Positions 28,495 through 35,797 of a DNA stretch of 64,000 nt are shown one piece after another. The notes beneath the pieces are model-generated. The model made no database searches. It saw only the letters and a program-made list of their open reading frames with translations, and had not been told where the DNA came from. The translations under genes were made by a program, and so were the position numbers. Position 1 is the first letter of the stretch, and each line of letters opens with the position of its first letter. Location: positions 160,854 through 224,853 of IMG/VR virus record IMGVR_UViG_3300020473_000013; one strand, written 5' to 3'.

Positions 28495-28518
28495 CGGGGG
28501 CCTAGCGCCCCCGTTTTT
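28495..28518 (+). terminator. Intrinsic terminator
   Basis: CGGGGGC-CTAGC-GCCCCCG followed by TTTTT. Confidence 0.8.
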
Positions 28519-28566: not shown

Positions 28567-30204
28567 ATGACCGAGATCGTTATAAGCGGTTTCGAGTCCT
28601 TGTCGTTCTCTAATCCGAGCTCCGTCCGCAAATCACGCAACAGTAAAGGTGGCGGTGTTCAGAAGAAGCGCAAGGGCGCGACAACGCGCTTAGGTAAGGA
28701 CCAGTTTCTCAAGCTGTCCAGCAAGGAGCAGGAACGCTATCTGGAGACGTTCCCCAAATCCAGCCACCGCAATCTAATCGGCGGCAAGGAAAAGGACTCC
28801 TCTCCTGAGCCTGAGAAAGAAGCCAAGAAGCCGAAGACTGGCAAGGCTCCCGAAGATCAAGCACCTGCTAAAGGGAAGAAAAAGAAGGGAAAGAAAGCCA
28901 AGAAAAAGGAGCAGGACTTCCAAGTCAAGGACGAGAAGCCAAAGAAGATTTCTCACGAAGACTTCCTCAAGTTGAGCGAGAAGGAACAAAAAGCCTATAA
29001 GAAGGCTTATCCGAAAGACTCATTTACTCGCAAGCATCACGTTACCAAGAAAAAGAACATCGTCGAGCAAAACAAGACCGGCGATGCAGGTGAGACTGTC
29101 CTGGATGGCAGCGAGAAGTCTTCCACCTCCAAGCAGCGCAAAGCCGCAGAAAATAAGGCCTTGAAGCAAGGACGGGATGAGGCTAGAAAGGATGTGCGTC
29201 ACGGCGTTACTCAGGAAGCTACGGACGCGCTCAAGACCTCAAAGCCCGAGGATTTGAAGGCTGCGTCCAAGAACCTGAAAGATAACCGTGAGGACAACGT
29301 CCGCAACATCAAGAAGACGCTGCGGAATCGCCACGAGTTTGTGTCCTTCGATAAGAAGGAGATCAAGCGGGCTCAGGAGGCGATGCGTCGTGAAGCCAAA
29401 CGCGACGAGACGACGTGGAACAATCGCGACCTCAACAAGACCAAGAAGCTGCTGGAACGCTTGGAGAAAGGCGACACCCAAAAGCTGACCAAGCACGAGC
29501 GGGAGCTTCTGGAGCGTGTAGGCGAAAGCGCTCCCAAGAAGAAGGAACCGTTCTGGAAGCGGGACCTCAATACCTTAAAGCAGATCATGACAGGCGAGAA
29601 GGTGGAGCCCGAAGGTCGCAGTAACGCGATGTTGGCCCTCACCATGGTGTCTCGCTACGCCCTTCTGGCCGGAGGTGTTGCAGCCCTTTCCATCGGTGCG
29701 GCACCTGCCGCTCTCCACATCGCCCAGCACCTGTTCTCACAGTGGGATGACTTCACGGTCAACGCTTCCTCTGTAGAGGACATCGACGAGCACGCGGATG
29801 CCGACGCGGCTATCTATGCTGCGTATGATGCTGTGGCTGATACTCTGGCTCACATGGATCATGAGGAGTTTGTCGAGGACGTGACCAAGACGTTCCGAGA
29901 GTTCCGGTCCGAATCCAGTTCCGACGATATGTTGAGTAAGCTGATGGTGTTCCTTATGAACACAGGTGTCCACGTCAAAACACGTCGCCAGTACAGCTTA
30001 GGATTTCGCACGTCCCAGACAGAGGCGGCCCGCAACTGCCTAGACCGTTTCGCAACAGCTAACGGCTTCTCCCTCACGGCCGACAGCGATAACGTCGAGT
30101 ACAGCCGTAATCAGGAGCAGCTTACCATGCCGATCGGCAAGAGCGTCGTTCTGTATAACCCTGGCAACCTCGCGTTCGCCAAAGACATCGCAGGGAGGTC
30201 CTGA
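28567..30204 (+). CDS. Lys-rich protein with a hydrophobic hairpin (putative internal/ejection protein)
   Basis: AGGAGG RBS; duplicated FLKLS.KEQ..Y...P motif; ALLAGGVAALSIGAAPAAL hydrophobic segment. Confidence 0.7.
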   Translation: MTEIVISGFESLSFSNPSSVRKSRNSKGGGVQKKRKGATTRLGKDQFLKLSSKEQERYLETFPKSSHRNLIGGKEKDSSPEPEKEAKKPKTGKAPEDQAPAKGKKKKGKKAKKKEQDFQVKDEKPKKISHEDFLKLSEKEQKAYKKAYPKDSFTRKHHVTKKKNIVEQNKTGDAGETVLDGSEKSSTSKQRKAAENKALKQGRDEARKDVRHGVTQEATDALKTSKPEDLKAASKNLKDNREDNVRNIKKTLRNRHEFVSFDKKEIKRAQEAMRREAKRDETTWNNRDLNKTKKLLERLEKGDTQKLTKHERELLERVGESAPKKKEPFWKRDLNTLKQIMTGEKVEPEGRSNAMLALTMVSRYALLAGGVAALSIGAAPAALHIAQHLFSQWDDFTVNASSVEDIDEHADADAAIYAAYDAVADTLAHMDHEEFVEDVTKTFREFRSESSSDDMLSKLMVFLMNTGVHVKTRRQYSLGFRTSQTEAARNCLDRFATANGFSLTADSDNVEYSRNQEQLTMPIGKSVVLYNPGNLAFAKDIAGRS

Positions 30205-30548
30205 TGTCCCGTATTTCATACCGCTGCCTTCCTGAGGAGCGTGGTCTTCCTTTCGCGGAGAAAACTCGCTGGTACGTATATCACGGCGAGAGTTGCGTTG
30301 GGTGTATCAAGCTGAGCGATAGCGCACAGGCTCGCTCACCTAATCTGCGCGTCTGGCACCCTATTGTCCATGAACAGGCTTTCGATCCCATGGAGTTCCC
30401 GCATACAGATGACGGGCAAGGGTTCGCGGAACCGTTCGTGTTGACGAACGACACGGAGGACGAGCACAACCTCGAACTTCATTACCCCTCGCTGATGTCC
30501 ATGTACGAAGCCCGGCAATGGATTCGCAGCATCGTTAACCAGGAGTGA
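30204..30548 (+). CDS. Hypothetical protein
   Basis: TGATG coupling; GGAGG RBS. Confidence 0.7.
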   Translation: MSRISYRCLPEERGLPFAEKTRWYVYHGESCVGCIKLSDSAQARSPNLRVWHPIVHEQAFDPMEFPHTDDGQGFAEPFVLTNDTEDEHNLELHYPSLMSMYEARQWIRSIVNQE

Positions 30549-30555
30549 CTCCACC

Positions 30556-31302
30556 ATGAGCAATATGATGAAGTCGGTGAGCTTTAGTATCGGCGCACCG
30601 GCTACCGAACTGAAAGGCGTCAGCAACAAGAGCAAGGACGTCCGCCTCGGCAGCCAGGTAACAGGCGATGCTGAGCGTACAATCGACGCCAACCTTTGGC
30701 TCGGGCGTGCTGCGGAGCATTACCATATCAGCCCCAACCTGAGTGATTACATTCTGGTGCCGGTGCCTAGCGTGATCTCCGAGCTACCGAATACCAACGG
30801 CGACTCCGTTTCCACTGCCGAGCTGTTGCGCTTCCATCCGGAACTCGGTCAGCTCGCGTACCGATCGTGGGTGGGTAAACCGACTCACGTGGAGCACGAT
30901 AACCGCGACATCACCAAGGCCAAAGGTGTCATCTTCGACGTGTTCCTTCGTAAGCTGCCGAGCTTTGCCGGAGGCCACGTCAAGGTAATCAAGTTGCTCG
31001 GTTTCGACCGTACCAAGGACTCGGTTCTGTGCGACGCCATCCTGTCCAAGCGTGTAAATACGTATTCGCTTGGCATGTATTTCAAGGCGTACCAGTGCTC
31101 CATCTGCGGTAACGTCGTGTCGCAGAACTCTGGGGCGCCGTGCCAGCACACCCGCCCTCGCCGCAAGACGTATAAGCAGGTGGACGGCCGCCTCGCGTAC
31201 CGCAAGTGCCTGAACATTATCGGGTTTGAAACCTCGGTCGTAGCAGACCCGGCCTACTCAGTCGCGAACAGCGACCTGATTTTGGACCCGACCAACATGT
31301 AG
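30556..31302 (+). CDS. Prohead maturation protease (HK97/herpes-type fold) with a zinc-ribbon insert
   Basis: NGD, GKPTHVEHDN, NTYSLG, CSICGN...PCQH, FETSVVADPA; upstream of scaffold and capsid. Confidence 0.75.
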   Translation: MSNMMKSVSFSIGAPATELKGVSNKSKDVRLGSQVTGDAERTIDANLWLGRAAEHYHISPNLSDYILVPVPSVISELPNTNGDSVSTAELLRFHPELGQLAYRSWVGKPTHVEHDNRDITKAKGVIFDVFLRKLPSFAGGHVKVIKLLGFDRTKDSVLCDAILSKRVNTYSLGMYFKAYQCSICGNVVSQNSGAPCQHTRPRRKTYKQVDGRLAYRKCLNIIGFETSVVADPAYSVANSDLILDPTNM

Positions 31303-31310
31303 GAGGATTC

Positions 31311-31826
31311 ATGCTTACCCACATGGTGAGTTTGTCTAGCGTCAGTTGGGAAGTTAGCCCGTACACCGGAACCAAAGGCTGTTACGTGGCAATGCAACCC
31401 GACGATCCCAGCAAGCTGCGTATTATGGACCTGTGCGCACGCCTCGGTGTGGATACCGATCCGCGCAAGCTGCACAGCACCTTGATGTACAGCCCTGAGC
31501 TGGCCCCGGAACCTGATACGTTCACCAGCTATCCTTCACGCGCTACTGCGCAGTGTCGAAAGGTGGAATACTTTCCGGGTCACAACAACGCCGGCTACTT
31601 GGTGGCAACACTGGATAGCGATGATCTCCAGTCCGAGCATCTTCGACTCAAGGAGAACGGCGCGAAGCACACCTACGATCCTTACAAGCCGCACGTCACT
31701 CTAGCCTCCCACTTCGACATGACCGACGAGTTGGACGAGGCCATGCAGGCGATGAACATGGAACTGGGCGCTAACCCTGTCCAGTTCGGCTTCGATTCGT
31801 ACACGGTGAGCGACATCAAGGACTGA
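31311..31826 (+). CDS. acb1: 2H phosphoesterase, anti-CBASS nuclease Acb1 (T4 gp57B)-like
   Basis: GCYVA, LHSTLMYS, LVATLDSDDL..EH, GAKHTYDPYKPHVTL: two HxT motifs with Acb1-type spacing. Confidence 0.8.
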   Translation: MLTHMVSLSSVSWEVSPYTGTKGCYVAMQPDDPSKLRIMDLCARLGVDTDPRKLHSTLMYSPELAPEPDTFTSYPSRATAQCRKVEYFPGHNNAGYLVATLDSDDLQSEHLRLKENGAKHTYDPYKPHVTLASHFDMTDELDEAMQAMNMELGANPVQFGFDSYTVSDIKD

Positions 31827-31995
31827 TTTTTGCAGTCTATAATTTGTTACCATTGCAGCGATTCGAGGCTTGCTCAGAAGACCAACGCCGATTTCTGCAT
31901 TTGGTAATTTTAATGCAACGCACGATAAGTAGCGTGCATTTTTGCCGCGGCCCTAATCAGGGTCGCACCCTCCAACCTTCATGATAGGAACCGCT

Positions 31996-33936
31996 ATGAA
32001 AAAGTCCAACGTTACTCTCCGGGGTATCGTGGTCGCGGGCGATTCTCGGCAAGAAGCTGAGGATAACTACCGCGCTGTGGCTACTGGCGTTTCGGTGAAG
32101 GCGCTCCAGGATAAGGACAACGAGTTTGTCATTCTGAGCAACGCCGATTCCGAGCTGACCCTCATGAACCCGCTTAGCGGCGACATGAACCTGGTCGAAG
32201 CCAGTGACCTGCAGAACGACCACTTCGAGTTTCTAGCGTCCGATAGCGACGAGACGGTGACTACGCACTACACCCTCTGCGCCTCCGGATGTGGTTCGCA
32301 CATCATCGCCGATGATACCGAACTCATGGAACGCTGCCCCGTCTGCGCTTCCACTCTCGAAGACCTCAGCGCTGATGACATCGAGGAAGCCCTCAACGCC
32401 GAAGCCTCCGACGAGGAAGAGGAAGACTTCGATGAAGAAGTCGAGGCCTCCGATGACAGCAATGAAGGCGTCTCCACTCCTCTTCTGGTGGTGGCCGGTT
32501 CGTACAACGATGCTGTCGAAGCGTTCCGCTCCATCGCTAGCGGCGAAGCCGATACCGAAGGCTATGACTGTGGTGGCCTGACCATCGTGGCCGACGCAGA
32601 CTCGGACATCCAGTACAGCCCGTACAACGCCGAAGAAGCTGTGGCGTCCGAAGCTCCGGAAGGCTTCTCCGTCGAGGCTTCCACAAACGGCGATTACGCT
32701 GCTCACTGGTACATGTGTGCCAGCGACGAGTGCGGTGTTCATGTCGTGGCGTCCGATGATGAGCCCGTTTTCTGCCCCGTGTGCGCTTCAGGCCTGATCG
32801 AGCCTGACGAGGAAGATCAGCAGGAAGACGAGGTTACCGCTTCCGCCGAGGACGACGAGGAAGACTACGAGGCCGAACTCGAAGACGTGGCTCTGGCCGG
32901 CGACGACGAGGATGAAGAGGAAGACGAGCCCGACGACGAAGACGATGATGACGAAGACGACGAGGAGGATGACGACGAAGACGAAGACTTCGACGACGAG
33001 AACTCCATGTCTGTCTCCAGCGTCACCGTGGAAGACGACGAGGAAGACTTCAAGGGTGAAGCCTCTGCCGAGCACGAAGAAGCCGCAGCGTCCGCAGCTT
33101 CGGAGCCCGCTCCTCTGGAATCTGTGTCCACCGACCTGCTGGCGCTTGCGTCCGCTCAAGGTGAACTCTCCGTCGACCAGCTCGAAGTGGCGTTTGCCGG
33201 AGACATCGCTGGCGAGAGCACCTGGGTAGCGTTCCATGGTGGTAAGCCTGTGGCCACCGTCACCGCGTCCGGCACCAGTGCTCAATCCGAAGTCTTCAAT
33301 TCCAACGTATTCAGCAATCTGGTTCATGCCTCCGCTTCCGAGCAAGGTGTGAGCGCTGCGCTGGAGGAGCTGGGCTTCAAGCCGATCGAGGCATCCGTCG
33401 AAGTCGATTCCTATGTACAGAATGAAGTCTCCAGCCGAGTCGAGGCCGGTGTTTCTGATGTTCGTAGTAATTTCGAGAAGTCCAGCAGCGATCACGCTGC
33501 TCGCTTCGAGGCCGCCCTGGCGACCGCCGCCACCGGCATCAACAAGGGCTTCTTCGACAACGTGAACAACCCTGTTAAGGGAGCCCTCGTGGCCACCATG
33601 AGTTCTCTCGGTATCCGGAACCCGGAGCGCGTCGTTGCCTCGGCATTCGCCAAGCACAACGAGCAATACCTCCGCAATCTGGTCGCCAAGGCGAACGAGA
33701 TCATGGACTACGACGTGGAAGTGCAGAACCAGCTCACCAAGGCTGTCGCTTCTACTGCCGAAGAGCAAGTCGCTACGGCCAGCGCCGGTGAAGGTGAACA
33801 CCTGCCGATCGGCAAGCCCGTAACCTCCGCGAAACCCTCGGCCCGCCCGCAGGAAGACGCACCCTCGCAGGAAGCCACTGCATCCGCCGGCCCGAACCTG
33901 GACGCTGTTCTGGGTACCCTCGGCCGTCGGCGCTAA
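31996..33936 (+). CDS. Capsid scaffolding/core protein with two zinc-ribbon repeats and acidic tracts
   Basis: HYTLCASGCGSH...CPVCAS and HWYMCASDECGVH...CPVCAS; long D/E runs; lies between protease and capsid genes. Confidence 0.7.
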   Translation: MKKSNVTLRGIVVAGDSRQEAEDNYRAVATGVSVKALQDKDNEFVILSNADSELTLMNPLSGDMNLVEASDLQNDHFEFLASDSDETVTTHYTLCASGCGSHIIADDTELMERCPVCASTLEDLSADDIEEALNAEASDEEEEDFDEEVEASDDSNEGVSTPLLVVAGSYNDAVEAFRSIASGEADTEGYDCGGLTIVADADSDIQYSPYNAEEAVASEAPEGFSVEASTNGDYAAHWYMCASDECGVHVVASDDEPVFCPVCASGLIEPDEEDQQEDEVTASAEDDEEDYEAELEDVALAGDDEDEEEDEPDDEDDDDEDDEEDDDEDEDFDDENSMSVSSVTVEDDEEDFKGEASAEHEEAAASAASEPAPLESVSTDLLALASAQGELSVDQLEVAFAGDIAGESTWVAFHGGKPVATVTASGTSAQSEVFNSNVFSNLVHASASEQGVSAALEELGFKPIEASVEVDSYVQNEVSSRVEAGVSDVRSNFEKSSSDHAARFEAALATAATGINKGFFDNVNNPVKGALVATMSSLGIRNPERVVASAFAKHNEQYLRNLVAKANEIMDYDVEVQNQLTKAVASTAEEQVATASAGEGEHLPIGKPVTSAKPSARPQEDAPSQEATASAGPNLDAVLGTLGRRR

Positions 33937-33958: not shown

Positions 33959-34645
33959 ATGATCAACCAAAAGTACACTCGTCTTTTCAATACTGAGCAC
34001 CGTCCGGTCGAGACCGGCGTGATCATCCCCGATGAAGGCATCGCCCTCGTCTACACCAAGGAAGGCGACAAGACCGTCGTTCGTCCGTCCACCGGCGCCG
34101 CCGGCGAGCACTTTGCGGGCCTGAGCCTGTCGCGCAACGCTCCGCCGCTGTTCATGCCGTACATCGAAGAAGCCTCCGTCGAAGGCGAGTTCCTGGAGCT
34201 GCCGCGCACTCCGATCGCCGGCCAGATTCTGGTGAAGATCGGTGGCACCAAGGTCACCATCAACGCCGGTACCGACGCACCTGCCGATGCTTCCAGCGTC
34301 AGTCTCGATGACAACACCATCCGCTTCCACGCTGATCACGACGGCGAAGACCTGATGGTGCAGATGATGTACGAGCCGACCATCACCGAAGCACGGCAGT
34401 GGAAAGGCGACATGCCGGTCGGCGGTCTGCCCTCTTCCGCTCAGGGTATCATCGGTGTCATCACCAAGGGCGACGCCAGCACTACCTACTTCGACGCCTC
34501 TGCCGACTGGTCTGGCGCAATCAAGGCCAAGCTGGGCCCGGACGGCATCTTCACTACCGTCGGCTCTGGCGCTCAGGCCGAAGGCGTCACCGTGCTGCAA
34601 TCGCCGACCCCGGCGGTTCCGCTCCTCGTCCTCAACATCGACTGA
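33959..34645 (+). CDS. Head structural/decoration protein
   Basis: Immediately upstream of the MCP; strongly biased codons typical of high expression. Confidence 0.65.
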   Translation: MINQKYTRLFNTEHRPVETGVIIPDEGIALVYTKEGDKTVVRPSTGAAGEHFAGLSLSRNAPPLFMPYIEEASVEGEFLELPRTPIAGQILVKIGGTKVTINAGTDAPADASSVSLDDNTIRFHADHDGEDLMVQMMYEPTITEARQWKGDMPVGGLPSSAQGIIGVITKGDASTTYFDASADWSGAIKAKLGPDGIFTTVGSGAQAEGVTVLQSPTPAVPLLVLNID

Positions 34646-34696
34646 TCCCACTCCAGCGAAGATCAGCAGACCATTTTAATCACGGAGAACTGAATC

Positions 34697-35797
34697 ATGA
34701 CTCAACCGTACAAAGGCGCACGTATGGTGCTCGCCAGTGGCGATCCGATCGAAGAACTGCGCTTCGGCAACTCCAACCAGCGCGCGCTCGATCCGAAGAC
34801 CGGCGAGTTCAACGCCAACGACAAGGGCGAACTGGTCAATGCCATCAGCAACCTGATGTCGGCCTACGCCAGCGGTGAAGTTCGCGAACAGCAGCCTGCC
34901 GAGATGTCCAGCGCCGAGATTTCCGAAGCTCGTCGCGAAGTTCTCGCCAGCGCTCTGAACGACGCTACCGGTCAGGAGTGGGCAGCTCTGGGTTCCGGCC
35001 TCGCTCGCCAGATCGACTCTGAGACCAGCCGTCAGGGCTTCCTGCGTCGCATCGCTCAGGGCCAGACCCTGCGCCAGGGTGAAGTGCCGCGTGTTCCGAT
35101 GCCCGCGCACGACAGCATCGCCATCGTCGCCACCAACGCTTCGTCTGTCGGCTACCAGACCATCCGTCAGCGCGTGTTCACTCCGGACGAGTTCGAGATT
35201 CAGGCGAACGTCCGCGTCGAGAACCTGGACATCGAACAGGTGAACGGCGATCTGCTGGAGCACGCCTACAACGACGGCCTGCAGGCTGTGATGGTTCAGG
35301 AAGACCGCCTGTGGAAAGACGCTGCTGACAAGACCGTCGGTGTCGTGAACGATCTGGAGTACATCGCTGGCGAGCTGACTACCCGCAACCTGGGTAATCT
35401 GCGTCAGGCCGTGGCCCGCTGGAACCTGCCGGTCAACACCGCCATCATCAGTAACGACTACTGGGCGGACATCATCGGCAGCCAGGACTTCGCTACCTTC
35501 CTCGATCCGATCACCAAGTACGACTTGGCTCTGAACGGTCAGATCGGTACTCTGGTCGGCATGCAGCTCCTGACTGACGCCTTCCGTCAGCCGAACCAGA
35601 AGGTCCTCGGCAGCGGCGAAATCTACGTCGTCGCCAGCCCGGAGAACCACGCTGCCTACTCCACCCGTGGCGGCATCCGGTCCACTCCGACCTCCGGTGC
35701 CAACGCCGGTAACAGCACGCGCGGCTGGTTCATGACTGAGCCGTTTTCTTTTGTACTCGCCAACAGCCGCTCCGTGGCGAAAGGCAAGCGGGTCTAA
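34697..35797 (+). CDS. Major capsid protein (HK97 fold)
   Basis: 366 aa, extreme codon bias; RQGFLRRI..Q.L.QGEVPR, QEDRLW, GQIGTLVGM; position after protease and scaffold. Confidence 0.85.
   Translation: MTQPYKGARMVLASGDPIEELRFGNSNQRALDPKTGEFNANDKGELVNAISNLMSAYASGEVREQQPAEMSSAEISEARREVLASALNDATGQEWAALGSGLARQIDSETSRQGFLRRIAQGQTLRQGEVPRVPMPAHDSIAIVATNASSVGYQTIRQRVFTPDEFEIQANVRVENLDIEQVNGDLLEHAYNDGLQAVMVQEDRLWKDAADKTVGVVNDLEYIAGELTTRNLGNLRQAVARWNLPVNTAIISNDYWADIIGSQDFATFLDPITKYDLALNGQIGTLVGMQLLTDAFRQPNQKVLGSGEIYVVASPENHAAYSTRGGIRSTPTSGANAGNSTRGWFMTEPFSFVLANSRSVAKGKRV

What the first reader, a model, noticed from the sequence alone, without database searches (positions are those of the whole stretch)
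31311..31826. Acb1-like anti-CBASS nuclease embedded between prohead protease and scaffold
Seen: LHSTLMYS and YKPHVTL 2H motifs, with flanks closely resembling T4 gp57B/Acb1 as I recall it. The gene sits in the core head operon, carries the VSLSS leader, and has a TGTAAATA motif at 31053 inside the protease gene upstream. Established: Acb1 hydrolyses CBASS cyclic nucleotides, and phage prohead proteases and capsid proteins have been linked to CBASS activation or escape. Inference: a counter-defence co-expressed with its trigger and possibly delivered by the virion.
Basis: partly seen in the sequence, partly recalled or inferred. Interest (0 to 1): 0.7.

Follow-up and report, generated by a model that had tools for sequence, protein, structure and literature searches.

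The report
Acb1-family phosphodiesterase beside jumbo-phage head protease
A marine jumbo phage carries a clear but diverged member of the known Acb1 family, enzymes that destroy the cyclic-nucleotide alarm signals of bacterial CBASS immunity; it is transcribed with the head-maturation protease gene, and nothing shows that it is packed into the virion.

Summary
The ORF at 31311-31826 (+, 171 aa) and both 2H motifs are real. It scores 63 bits on Pfam Acb1 (cut-off 27), while the LigT-type models fall below their cut-offs. Its nearest solved structures are phage Acb1 enzymes. An alignment-based AlphaFold model (pLDDT 92.9) superposes on BCSR5 Acb1 at TM 0.80-0.84. H55/T57/H128/T130 are invariant or nearly so in 99 homologues.

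The gene lies 8 nt after the head-maturation protease gene, with an AGGAGG site. A 154-nt structured spacer separates it from the acidic scaffold-like gene.

The same order occurs in two metagenomic relatives. PaBG keeps protease-gp227-Acb1, and Lu11 and HRDY3 lack the gene, so it is accessory. It also diverges faster than its neighbours (44% identity versus 90% for the capsid protein).

Marine metatranscriptome contigs cover it at protease-like depth.

- "VSLSS" is not a shared leader. It is a subfamily-conserved N-terminal motif.
- The TGTAAATA at 31053 is an atypical intragenic copy of a real promoter-like motif.
- Virion delivery has no support.

Verdict: a new member of a known family, of modest interest.

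The parts
31311..31826 (+). acb1-like gene, 171 aa: Acb1-family 2H cyclic-oligonucleotide phosphodiesterase
   Evidence: ORF. Pfam Acb1 63 bits against cut-off 27. PDB Acb1 hits at 8e-12 and 1e-6. AF2 pLDDT 92.9. Foldseek top five hits are all Acb1, TM 0.80-0.84.
31301..31306 (+). AGGAGG ribosome-binding site, 4 nt before the ATG at 31311, overlapping the protease stop codon (31300-31302)
   Evidence: Read from the sequence. It supports the 171-aa start over the 144-aa database call that begins at M28. Homologues align from residues 1-6.
31326..31340 (+). VSLSS: part of the subfamily-conserved N-terminal [IV]-S-[LI]-S motif, in a low-confidence, probably flexible segment
   Evidence: Single occurrence in the window. 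Conserved in most of 45 aligned homologues. pLDDT about 50 for residues 1-10.
31470..31493 (+). First 2H motif, LHSTLMYS (H55, T57 catalytic)
   Evidence: H55 and T57 are invariant in 99 homologues. They align with T4 H44/T46.
31683..31703 (+). Second 2H motif, YKPHVTL (H128, T130 catalytic)
   Evidence: H128 and T130 are at least 90% conserved. They align with T4 H113/T115.
30556..31302 (+). Head-maturation (prohead) protease gene, immediately upstream
   Evidence: phrog_18299, E 9e-95. 58% identical to PaBG gp226, 'putative prohead core protein protease'.
28567..30548 (+). Two upstream genes (545 aa and 114 aa) tightly packed with the protease; probable start of the same transcription unit
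   Evidence: Overlapping or 8-nt junctions. Strong terminator-like hairpin at 28495-28513 just before them. Same order in L009, L010 and PaBG.
31827..31980 (+). 154-nt structured spacer with a terminator-like hairpin (31920-31937 plus a T run) between acb1 and the scaffold-like gene
   Evidence: Terminator scan. RNA fold z-score -4.0. GC 46.8% against 56% for the window.
31981..33936 (+). 651-aa acidic scaffold-like protein (role inferred from position and composition)
   Evidence: phrog_20988, E 5e-130, labelled 'ATPase'. Homologue of PaBG gp82. It precedes the virion structural protein and the major head protein.
33959..35797 (+). Virion structural protein (228 aa) and major head protein (366 aa)
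   Evidence: phrog_16710 and phrog_2522. The major head protein is 68% identical to that of PaBG.
31053..31060 (+). TGTAAATA inside the protease gene: an atypical copy of the genome's promoter-like motif, probably non-functional
   Evidence: Genome-wide survey. No exact second copy between 9376 and 42160. RNA-library contig depth does not rise downstream of it: 42.6 to 25 in X4, 12.5 to 4.2 in X5.

Best explanation
The gene encodes a soluble, metal-independent 2H phosphodiesterase of the Acb1 family. It belongs to the longer subfamily whose solved representative is the Burkholderia phage BCSR5 enzyme.

By analogy with T4 and FBB1 Acb1, the two HxT motifs (H55/T57, H128/T130) cut a 3'-5' phosphodiester bond of cyclic di- or trinucleotide immune signals, through a 2',3'-cyclic phosphate intermediate. 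This linearises the signal, so the CBASS effector (or another effector driven by cyclic oligonucleotides) is not switched on.

The gene is the last one of a tightly packed late unit: 545-aa gene, 114-aa gene, head protease, acb1. The enzyme is therefore made in the infected cell's cytoplasm while proheads are assembled. CBASS signalling is reported to act at that stage. It is an accessory, fast-evolving counter-defence gene occupying a variable slot between protease and scaffold in PaBG-like jumbo phages.

Shown here: family membership by sequence and predicted fold, the catalytic tetrad, gene order, conservation of that order, and presence in environmental RNA libraries.

Inferred: the substrate, the anti-CBASS effect, late timing, and co-transcription as one mRNA.
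For: Family assignment:
- Pfam Acb1 63 bits (cut-off 27); 2_5_RNA_ligase2 25.2 (cut-off 27) and LigT_PEase 18.7 (cut-off 23.3) both fall below threshold.
- All 102 aligned sequences (the query, 98 database homologues and 3 from named phages) hit Pfam Acb1.
- phmmer against PDB finds only Acb1 chains: 9q2g 8e-12, 7t26 1e-6. The profile search gives 1e-31 and 5e-20.
- AF2 model pLDDT 92.9. Foldseek ranks BCSR5 and FBB1 Acb1 first (E 5e-13 to 6e-8); plant CPDase follows at 1e-4 and E. coli LigT at 1e-2.
- H55 and T57 are invariant; H128 and T130 are at least 90% conserved.
- Aromatic stacking positions are kept: Y25 = Y12, F88 = W74, Y122 = F107.

Operon structure: an 8-nt gap with AGGAGG, and terminator-like hairpins before 28567 and after acb1.

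Synteny: L009 and L010 share the order, and PaBG has protease-gp227-gp228. Lu11 and HRDY3 have no Acb1, so the gene is accessory.

Divergence: 44-47% identity, against 72-82% for the protease and 90% for the capsid protein.

Expression: RNA libraries from two samples cover 31427-31826 at depths close to the protease region and below scaffold and capsid. DNA runs are flat.

Precedent: T4 acb1 is expressed middle/late. T4 57B also sits among morphogenesis genes, between 57A and ipI.
Against: - No enzymology or phenotype exists for this protein or any close relative.
- Identity to characterised Acb1 enzymes is only 22-26%.
- The glutamate that reads adenine N6 in FBB1/T4 (E141) aligns with N155, and that position varies within the subfamily. 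Substrate range may therefore differ.
- The host is unknown, so it is not known whether it carries CBASS.
- RNA evidence comes from assembled contigs without strand or local depth. It shows presence, not transcript ends or timing.
Confidence: 0.75

Rival explanations
1. Virion-delivered Acb1. The conserved N-terminal peptide acts as a capsid-targeting sequence. The enzyme is loaded into the prohead, trimmed by the neighbouring protease (for example after S12-W13-E14), and injected with the DNA to pre-empt CBASS.
For: - The gene is adjacent to, and probably translated from the same mRNA as, the prohead protease.
- About 20 N-terminal residues precede the first strand of the fold, modelled at low confidence.
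- That segment is conserved in the subfamily.
- T4 acb1 lies next to ipI, a packaged internal protein.
- The portal protein of cyanophage Pam3 (PDB 8hds) carries a C-terminal Acb1-like domain with both H-x-T/S motifs. A virion-tethered 2H domain therefore exists elsewhere.
Against: - The N-terminal motif is equally conserved in homologues that are not near head genes (L011, L015).
- The candidate 'x-W-E' cleavage motif is not conserved: L009 has E-W-V and L010 has K at P3.
- PaBG gp228 is not among the 14 virion proteins identified.
- Lu11 and HRDY3 make heads without the gene.
- CBASS acts late, so pre-delivery is not needed, and T4 Acb1 works when expressed middle/late.
Confidence: 0.05
2. 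An RNA-repair or RNA-end-processing 2H enzyme (LigT/CPDase-like), as the 'RNA ligase' labels in PHROGs and GenBank suggest. It would heal 2',3'-cyclic phosphate ends made by host anticodon nucleases or other RNases.
For: - PHROG 755 is labelled 'RNA ligase', and PaBG gp228 is annotated 'putative RNA ligase LigT'.
- There are weak sub-threshold hits to 2_5_RNA_ligase2 and LigT_PEase.
- The adenine-reading glutamate of Acb1 is not clearly kept.
Against: - Both LigT-type Pfam models score below their cut-offs, while Acb1 scores 36 bits above its own.
- Structural neighbours are Acb1 enzymes by a margin of about eight orders of magnitude in E-value over LigT.
- T4 57B carries the same 'RNA ligase' label yet is the experimentally defined Acb1, so the label is historical.
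- No RNA ligase or kinase partner gene sits next to it.
Confidence: 0.1
3. Same fold and chemistry, but a different immune signal is the main target. Examples are cA3 of type III CRISPR/NucC, 2'3'-c-di-AMP-type signals, or larger rings.
For: - The long BCSR5-like subfamily has a different C-terminal region from T4/FBB1.
- The E141 equivalent is variable.
- T4 Acb1 already cleaves several signals, including 2'3'-c-di-AMP (PMC12657230).
Against: Nothing measured favours another substrate. The stacking aromatics of Acb1 are retained. Characterised Acb1 cannot take rings larger than three bases.
Confidence: 0.1
4. acb1 has its own promoter at the TGTAAATA of 31053, inside the protease gene, giving it expression independent of the head genes.
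For: TGTAAATA is strongly over-represented and strand-matched to genes in this genome. The 31053 copy is the only exact one between 9376 and 42160.
Against: - Typical copies lie in intergenic DNA 20-45 nt before an RBS and ATG. This one is 258 nt upstream and intragenic.
- About 3.5 chance copies are expected in the genome, and about 5 atypical ones are seen.
- RNA-library contig depth falls rather than rises across it.
Confidence: 0.1

Closest known systems
Acb1 of Burkholderia phage BCSR5 (PDB 9q2g / 9q2y, 'phosphodiesterase', open and closed lid)
   Same: Best sequence and fold match: phmmer 8e-12, profile 1e-31, Foldseek TM 0.80-0.84 over about 155 residues. Similar length (165 against 171 aa). 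Both HxT motifs and the same longer C-terminal helix-strand region are present.
   Different: Only 24-26% identical. I found no paper describing its substrates, so it adds a structure but no function. Its genomic context was not examined.
Acb1 of phage T4 (gene 57B) and Erwinia phage FBB1 (PDB 7t26/7t27), Hobbs et al. 2022 (PMC9117128)
   Same: 2H fold, HxT/HxT tetrad, and the conserved stacking residues Y12 (Y25 here), W74 (F88) and F107 (Y122). The C-terminal D-[IL]-K tail is kept. Local motif flanks agree (KIHSTICYS / YTPHITL against KLHSTLMYS / YKPHVTL). T4 57B also lies among morphogenesis genes and is expressed middle/late.
   Different: About 26% identity. This protein has about 13 more N-terminal residues, with a conserved [IV]S[LI]S motif, and a longer C-terminal region. 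The E141 adenine contact is not clearly conserved. Here the gene sits next to the head protease, not next to 57A/ipI.
PaBG gp228 ('putative RNA ligase LigT') and unnamed homologues in metagenomic PaBG-like jumbo phages
   Same: Same family (Pfam Acb1 54 bits in PaBG) and the same neighbourhood downstream of the prohead protease. The closest relatives, L009 and L010, have the identical order protease-Acb1-scaffold.
   Different: Only 32% identical to PaBG gp228 and 44-47% to L009/L010, though head genes are 58-90% identical. PaBG has an extra gene (gp227) in between, and its scaffold-capsid block lies elsewhere in the genome.
LigT / 2'-5' RNA ligase and CPDase-type 2H phosphoesterases
   Same: Same superfamily fold and H-x-T/S catalytic chemistry.
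   Different: Pfam scores are below cut-off. Foldseek gives E 1e-2, TM about 0.5, rmsd 4.7-5 Å.

Membership tests
Acb1 (Pfam PF23474, anti-CBASS 2H phosphodiesterase) | Scores above the curated family threshold and better than sister 2H families | tested here: met
   63 bits against a cut-off of 27. 2_5_RNA_ligase2 scores 25.2 (cut-off 27) and LigT_PEase 18.7 (cut-off 23.3).
Acb1 (Pfam PF23474, anti-CBASS 2H phosphodiesterase) | Compact 2H phosphoesterase fold closest to solved Acb1 structures | tested here: met
   AF2 pLDDT 92.9. Foldseek ranks 1-5 are all Acb1 (9q2y, 9q2g, 7t26, 7t27), TM 0.80-0.84 to BCSR5. This is a predicted structure, not a solved one.
Acb1 (Pfam PF23474, anti-CBASS 2H phosphodiesterase) | HxT/HxT catalytic tetrad (T4/FBB1 H44, T46, H113, T115) | tested here: met
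   H55, T57, H128 and T130 are aligned with the T4 residues and are invariant or at least 90% conserved in 99 homologues.
Acb1 (Pfam PF23474, anti-CBASS 2H phosphodiesterase) | Aromatic residues stacking on the bases (Y12, W74, F107, W147) | tested here: met
   Y25, F88, Y122 and F161 align with them. The first three lie in well-aligned regions. The fourth lies in the divergent C-terminus, so its equivalence is uncertain.
Acb1 (Pfam PF23474, anti-CBASS 2H phosphodiesterase) | Glutamate contacting adenine N6 (E141), which explains the requirement for an adenosine | tested here: inconclusive
   MAFFT places N155 there, and the position varies among close homologues: N, R, E, D, Y. The C-terminal alignment to T4 is unreliable.
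Acb1 (Pfam PF23474, anti-CBASS 2H phosphodiesterase) | Hydrolysis of A-containing cyclic di- and trinucleotides to linear 3'-phosphate products; rescue of phage from CBASS | not testable with these tools
   Needs enzyme assays and plating. The defining experiments are in PMC9117128.
LigT / 2'-5' RNA ligase family (PF02834, PF13563) | Score above the Pfam gathering threshold | tested here: not met
   18.7 against 23.3 and 25.2 against 27. E. coli LigT structures reach only Foldseek E 1e-2.
Packaged internal head protein with capsid-targeting sequence (T4 IPI/IPII/IPIII type; recalled from the T4 literature) | Short N-terminal targeting peptide ending in a conserved protease site, and presence in virions | tested here: inconclusive
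   An N-terminal extension exists, but its candidate S-W-E site is not conserved in relatives. The PaBG homologue is absent from the low-sensitivity virion protein list. No proteomics exists for this phage.
TGTAAATA promoter-like element of this genome | Intergenic, in gene orientation, 20-45 nt upstream of an RBS and start codon | tested here: not met
   The 31053 copy lies inside the protease ORF, 258 nt from the acb1 ATG, with no start codon behind it.

The most novel reading that the evidence does not exclude
The Acb1-like enzyme is physically coupled to head assembly. Its subfamily-conserved N-terminal peptide would target it into the prohead, where the adjacent protease processes it, so the virion injects a ready-made signal-degrading enzyme. 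The Acb1-like domain on the Pam3 portal protein would be an independent instance of the same strategy.
Probability: 0.05. Interest if true: 0.7.

Novelty: new member of a known kind. Interest (0 to 1): 0.3.

Why it matters
It extends the Acb1 anti-CBASS family into marine PaBG-like jumbo phages. It also shows that genes still labelled 'RNA ligase/LigT' in PaBG and related Erwinia and Dickeya jumbo phages belong to that family.

The gap between protease and scaffold turns out to be a variable accessory slot. It holds Acb1 in some lineages and unrelated small ORFs in Lu11 and HRDY3.

The gene evolves about twice as fast as its head-gene neighbours and is present in environmental RNA libraries. 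Both fit a counter-defence gene in active use.

None of this changes what is known about how Acb1 works. Late expression beside morphogenesis genes is already seen in T4.

Tried and rejected
- Megablast of the 6-kb region against the phage collection found nothing.
- Back-translated pattern search of IMG/VR found nothing.
- The word-indexed protein search found only the protein itself, as a truncated 144-aa call. The exhaustive HMMER search was needed.
- Single-sequence AlphaFold gave a useless model, pLDDT 32.6. It was replaced by the alignment-based model.
I rebuilt it without them.
- I tested whether the gene before Acb1 in Alexandravirus is also a protease. It is not.
- Pfam scans of the small ORFs filling the protease-scaffold slot in Lu11 and HRDY3, of PaBG gp227, and of the genes upstream of Acb1 in L011 and L015 gave nothing.
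- NCBIfam and PADLOC gave nothing for the protein.
- A PDB sequence search gave nothing for the protease.
- A literature search for virion proteomes of Acb1-bearing Erwinia jumbo phages found none usable.
- A search for a paper on the BCSR5 enzyme found none.
- Rfam and tRNA scans of the window were empty.
- Recent foreign origin of the gene is not supported: GC is 56.4% and GC3 71.5%, like the neighbours.
- No complex prediction was run, because I do not claim that Acb1 binds the protease or the scaffold.

Full report
**The observation.** The window holds an ORF at 31311-31826 on the + strand that encodes 171 residues. LHSTLMYS is encoded at 31470-31493 and YKPHVTL at 31683-31703. An AGGAGG site (31301-31306) lies 4 nt before the ATG and overlaps the stop codon of the preceding gene. 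The public gene call for this protein starts at M28 and gives 144 aa. The longer start is better supported, for two reasons. Homologues align from residues 1-6. The N-terminal segment is also conserved among them.

**What the protein is.**
- Pfam places it in Acb1 (PF23474): 63 bits against a cut-off of 27, E 3.2e-17. The two LigT-type models fall below their cut-offs, at 25.2 against 27 and 18.7 against 23.3.
- PHROGs puts it in phrog_755, labelled 'RNA ligase'. T4 gene 57B, the experimentally defined Acb1, carries the same label in its GenBank record.
- Against all PDB sequences, the only hits are Acb1 chains: BCSR5 9q2g at 8e-12 and FBB1 7t26 at 1.4e-6. A profile of 99 homologues raises these to 1e-31 and 5e-20.
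- An exhaustive HMMER search found 555 relatives. The best reach only 44-47% identity.
- All 102 aligned sequences (the query, 98 database homologues and 3 from named phages) hit Pfam Acb1.
- AlphaFold with that alignment gives pLDDT 92.9 and pTM 0.86.
- Foldseek ranks the BCSR5 and FBB1 Acb1 structures first, with TM 0.80-0.84 to BCSR5 and E down to 5e-13. Plant CPDase follows at 1e-4 and E. coli LigT at 1e-2.

**Defining residues.** Hobbs et al. (PMC9117128) define Acb1 by several features: an HxT/HxT tetrad (H44, T46, H113, T115), stacking aromatics (Y12, W74, F107, W147), E141 reading adenine N6, and a C-terminal lid. In this protein:
- The tetrad is H55, T57, H128 and T130. H55 and T57 are invariant, and H128 and T130 are at least 90% conserved.
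- Y25, F88 and Y122 occupy the first three aromatic positions.
- F161 and the C-terminal D-I-K may correspond to W147 and the lid, but the C-terminus aligns poorly.
- The E141 position aligns with N155 and varies within the subfamily.

Substrate range may therefore differ in detail from T4 Acb1.

**The genome.** The window is the last 64 kb of a 224,853-bp IMG/VR virus record with direct terminal repeats. The record has a single Acb1 match. The major head protein is 68% identical to that of Pseudomonas jumbo phage PaBG and 63-64% identical to those of Lu11 and HRDY3. Public runs holding this DNA are marine metagenomes.

**Neighbourhood.** Five genes flank acb1:

| Position | Gene | Evidence |
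|---|---|---|
| Upstream | 545-aa gene | |
| Upstream | 114-aa gene (phrog_31356) | |
| Upstream | Head-maturation protease (phrog_18299, E 9e-95) | |
| Downstream | 651-aa acidic protein (phrog_20988), then a 228-aa virion structural protein | |
| Downstream | Major head protein | |

- The upstream genes are joined by an overlap or by 8-nt gaps.
- A strong terminator-like hairpin precedes the unit at 28495-28513.
- A 154-nt AT-richer spacer follows acb1. It has a terminator-like hairpin at 31920-31937 and significant folding, z = -4.0.
- 'Scaffold' for the 651-aa protein is an inference from position and composition.

On this evidence, acb1 is most simply the last gene of the protease sub-operon.

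**Is the position conserved?** The answer is partly.
- Two metagenomic relatives have the identical order: glycosyltransferase, about 525-573 aa, about 114-125 aa, protease, Acb1, scaffold-like gene (L009 has an additional ferritin-like gene before the protease). In L010 the 228-aa protein and the capsid protein follow as well.
- PaBG has protease gp226, then gp227, then gp228 (the Acb1 homologue). Its scaffold and capsid block lies about 130 kb away.
- Lu11 and HRDY3 have three or four small unrelated ORFs in the protease-scaffold gap. They have no Acb1 anywhere.
- Two other homologues, L011 and L015, sit between an NAD-dependent ligase and topoisomerase I.
- In Alexandravirus the upstream genes are not proteases.

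The gene is thus accessory and sits in a variable slot. It is also the fastest-evolving gene in the block:

| Compared with | Acb1 | Protease | 228-aa protein | Capsid |
|---|---|---|---|---|
| L010 | 44% | 72% | 68% | 90% |
| L009 | 47% | 82% | – | – |
| PaBG | 32% | 58% | – | 68% |

(All values.) Its base composition matches that of its neighbours.

**Expression.** Four metatranscriptomic runs from two marine samples contain contigs identical to this region.
- Contig depths in X4 are 22-50 over the upstream unit, 185 for a contig running from 31484 through the spacer into the scaffold-like gene, and 616 over the capsid region.
- In X6 and X8 the acb1 fragments have depth about 8. The protease unit has 2-6 and the scaffold and capsid have 11-39.
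- DNA runs show flat depth over the same stretch: 26.2 in X1 as one contig, and about 3.5-6 in the others.

The gradient is therefore not DNA carry-over. These are assembled contigs without strand or local depth. They show that the gene is present in RNA at roughly protease-like level, but they give no transcript ends.

**The two side claims.**
- *VSLSS.* It occurs once in all six frames of the window. It belongs to an N-terminal [IV]-S-[LI]-S ... P-E-L/W-E motif shared by most of the 45 closest homologues, including those far from head genes. It is a feature of this Acb1 subfamily, in a segment modelled with low confidence. It is not a leader shared with head proteins.
- *TGTAAATA.* It occurs 22 times in the genome, against about 3.5 expected from base composition (my estimate). 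Strand matches gene direction, and most copies lie 20-45 nt before an RBS and ATG. It resembles the T4 late promoter TATAAATA (from my own knowledge). The 31053 copy is one of about five atypical ones: it is intragenic, 258 nt from the acb1 start, and contig depth falls rather than rises across it.

**Virion delivery.** Nothing supports it here.
- PaBG gp228 is not among the 14 Coomassie-visible virion proteins identified (PMC7412058). That survey would miss low-copy proteins.
- The candidate S-W-E cleavage site is not conserved in relatives.
- One lead in its favour is that the deposited sequence of the cyanophage Pam3 portal protein (PDB 8hds) has a C-terminal Acb1-like domain with both motifs. 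The Pam3 paper does not mention it.

**Comparison with what is known.** T4 acb1 (57B) lies between the tail-fibre chaperone gene 57A and the internal head protein gene ipI. It is expressed middle/late, which one report describes as matching the timing of CBASS activation (bioRxiv 10.64898/2026.03.30.715471). The Panoptes paper also mentions its later expression (PMC12657230). Acb1 predictions in jumbo phages have been reported (PMC13573597). An Acb1 gene among late morphogenesis genes is therefore not new in kind.

**Verdict.** This is a well-supported, diverged new member of the Acb1 family in a marine PaBG-like jumbo phage. It is probably co-transcribed with the head protease as an accessory counter-defence gene. 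The leader, private-promoter and virion-delivery ideas are unsupported.

Noticed in passing
Whole genome G000; in the window at 1328, 9376, 42160, 55816, 58585 (typical) and 4577, 31053, 54063 (atypical): TGTAAATA occurs 22 times (about 3.5 expected), always in the direction of the local genes. It usually lies 20-45 nt upstream of an RBS and ATG. This is a candidate late-type promoter resembling T4's TATAAATA. Three copies (1328, 55816, 58585) share an extended AACTGTAAATAT...AAACACGC context.
   Followed up: partly
PDB 8hds chain A, residues 489-583 (not in the window): The cyanophage Pam3 portal protein sequence has a C-terminal Acb1-like 2H domain with both H-x-T/S motifs (profile E 2e-5). 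The Pam3 structure paper does not mention it. This may be a virion-tethered phosphodiesterase.
   Followed up: partly
window 31981-33936: The 651-aa scaffold-like protein has two similar Cys-rich segments (C-x2-C ... C-P-V-C, zinc-ribbon-like) and a long poly-Asp/Glu tract. The PHROG label 'ATPase' and the PaBG label '60S ribosomal-like protein' look like misnomers. One DNA run (X2) shows a rearranged joint inside the acidic repeat (33048 to 32412).
   Followed up: no
window 31311-31391: The public protein collection holds this gene only as a 144-aa product starting at M28. That call loses the conserved N-terminal motif and the first beta-strand residues that align to solved Acb1 structures.
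   Followed up: yes
window 31484-31486: In two RNA libraries of one sample, a high-depth contig begins inside acb1 at 31484/31486 and runs through the spacer into the scaffold-like gene. This could be a processing site, an internal start, or only a coverage dropout.
   Followed up: no
window 31827-31980: The acb1-scaffold spacer folds much better than shuffled controls (z = -4.0). It has three or four hairpins, including a terminator-like one. There is no Rfam match.
   Followed up: partly
L005 3044-4230 (Lu11) and L004 3161-4167 (HRDY3): In the relatives that lack Acb1, the same protease-scaffold gap holds three or four small ORFs of unknown function (39-120 aa). No Pfam family was found among the five tested; the shortest two were not tested. 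They are candidates for other accessory or counter-defence genes.
   Followed up: partly
P0070 (373 aa): One homologue carries the Acb1 domain fused behind DNA polymerase beta palm and thumb domains. Several others (P0100, P0116, P0130, P0131, P0069) have 120-300 extra N-terminal residues without a Pfam match.
   Followed up: partly
window 28567-30204: The 545-aa first gene of the unit has a Lys-rich, low-complexity N-terminal half and a hydrophobic segment near residue 345-385. It is syntenic with the protease in all relatives examined, and its function is unknown.
   Followed up: no
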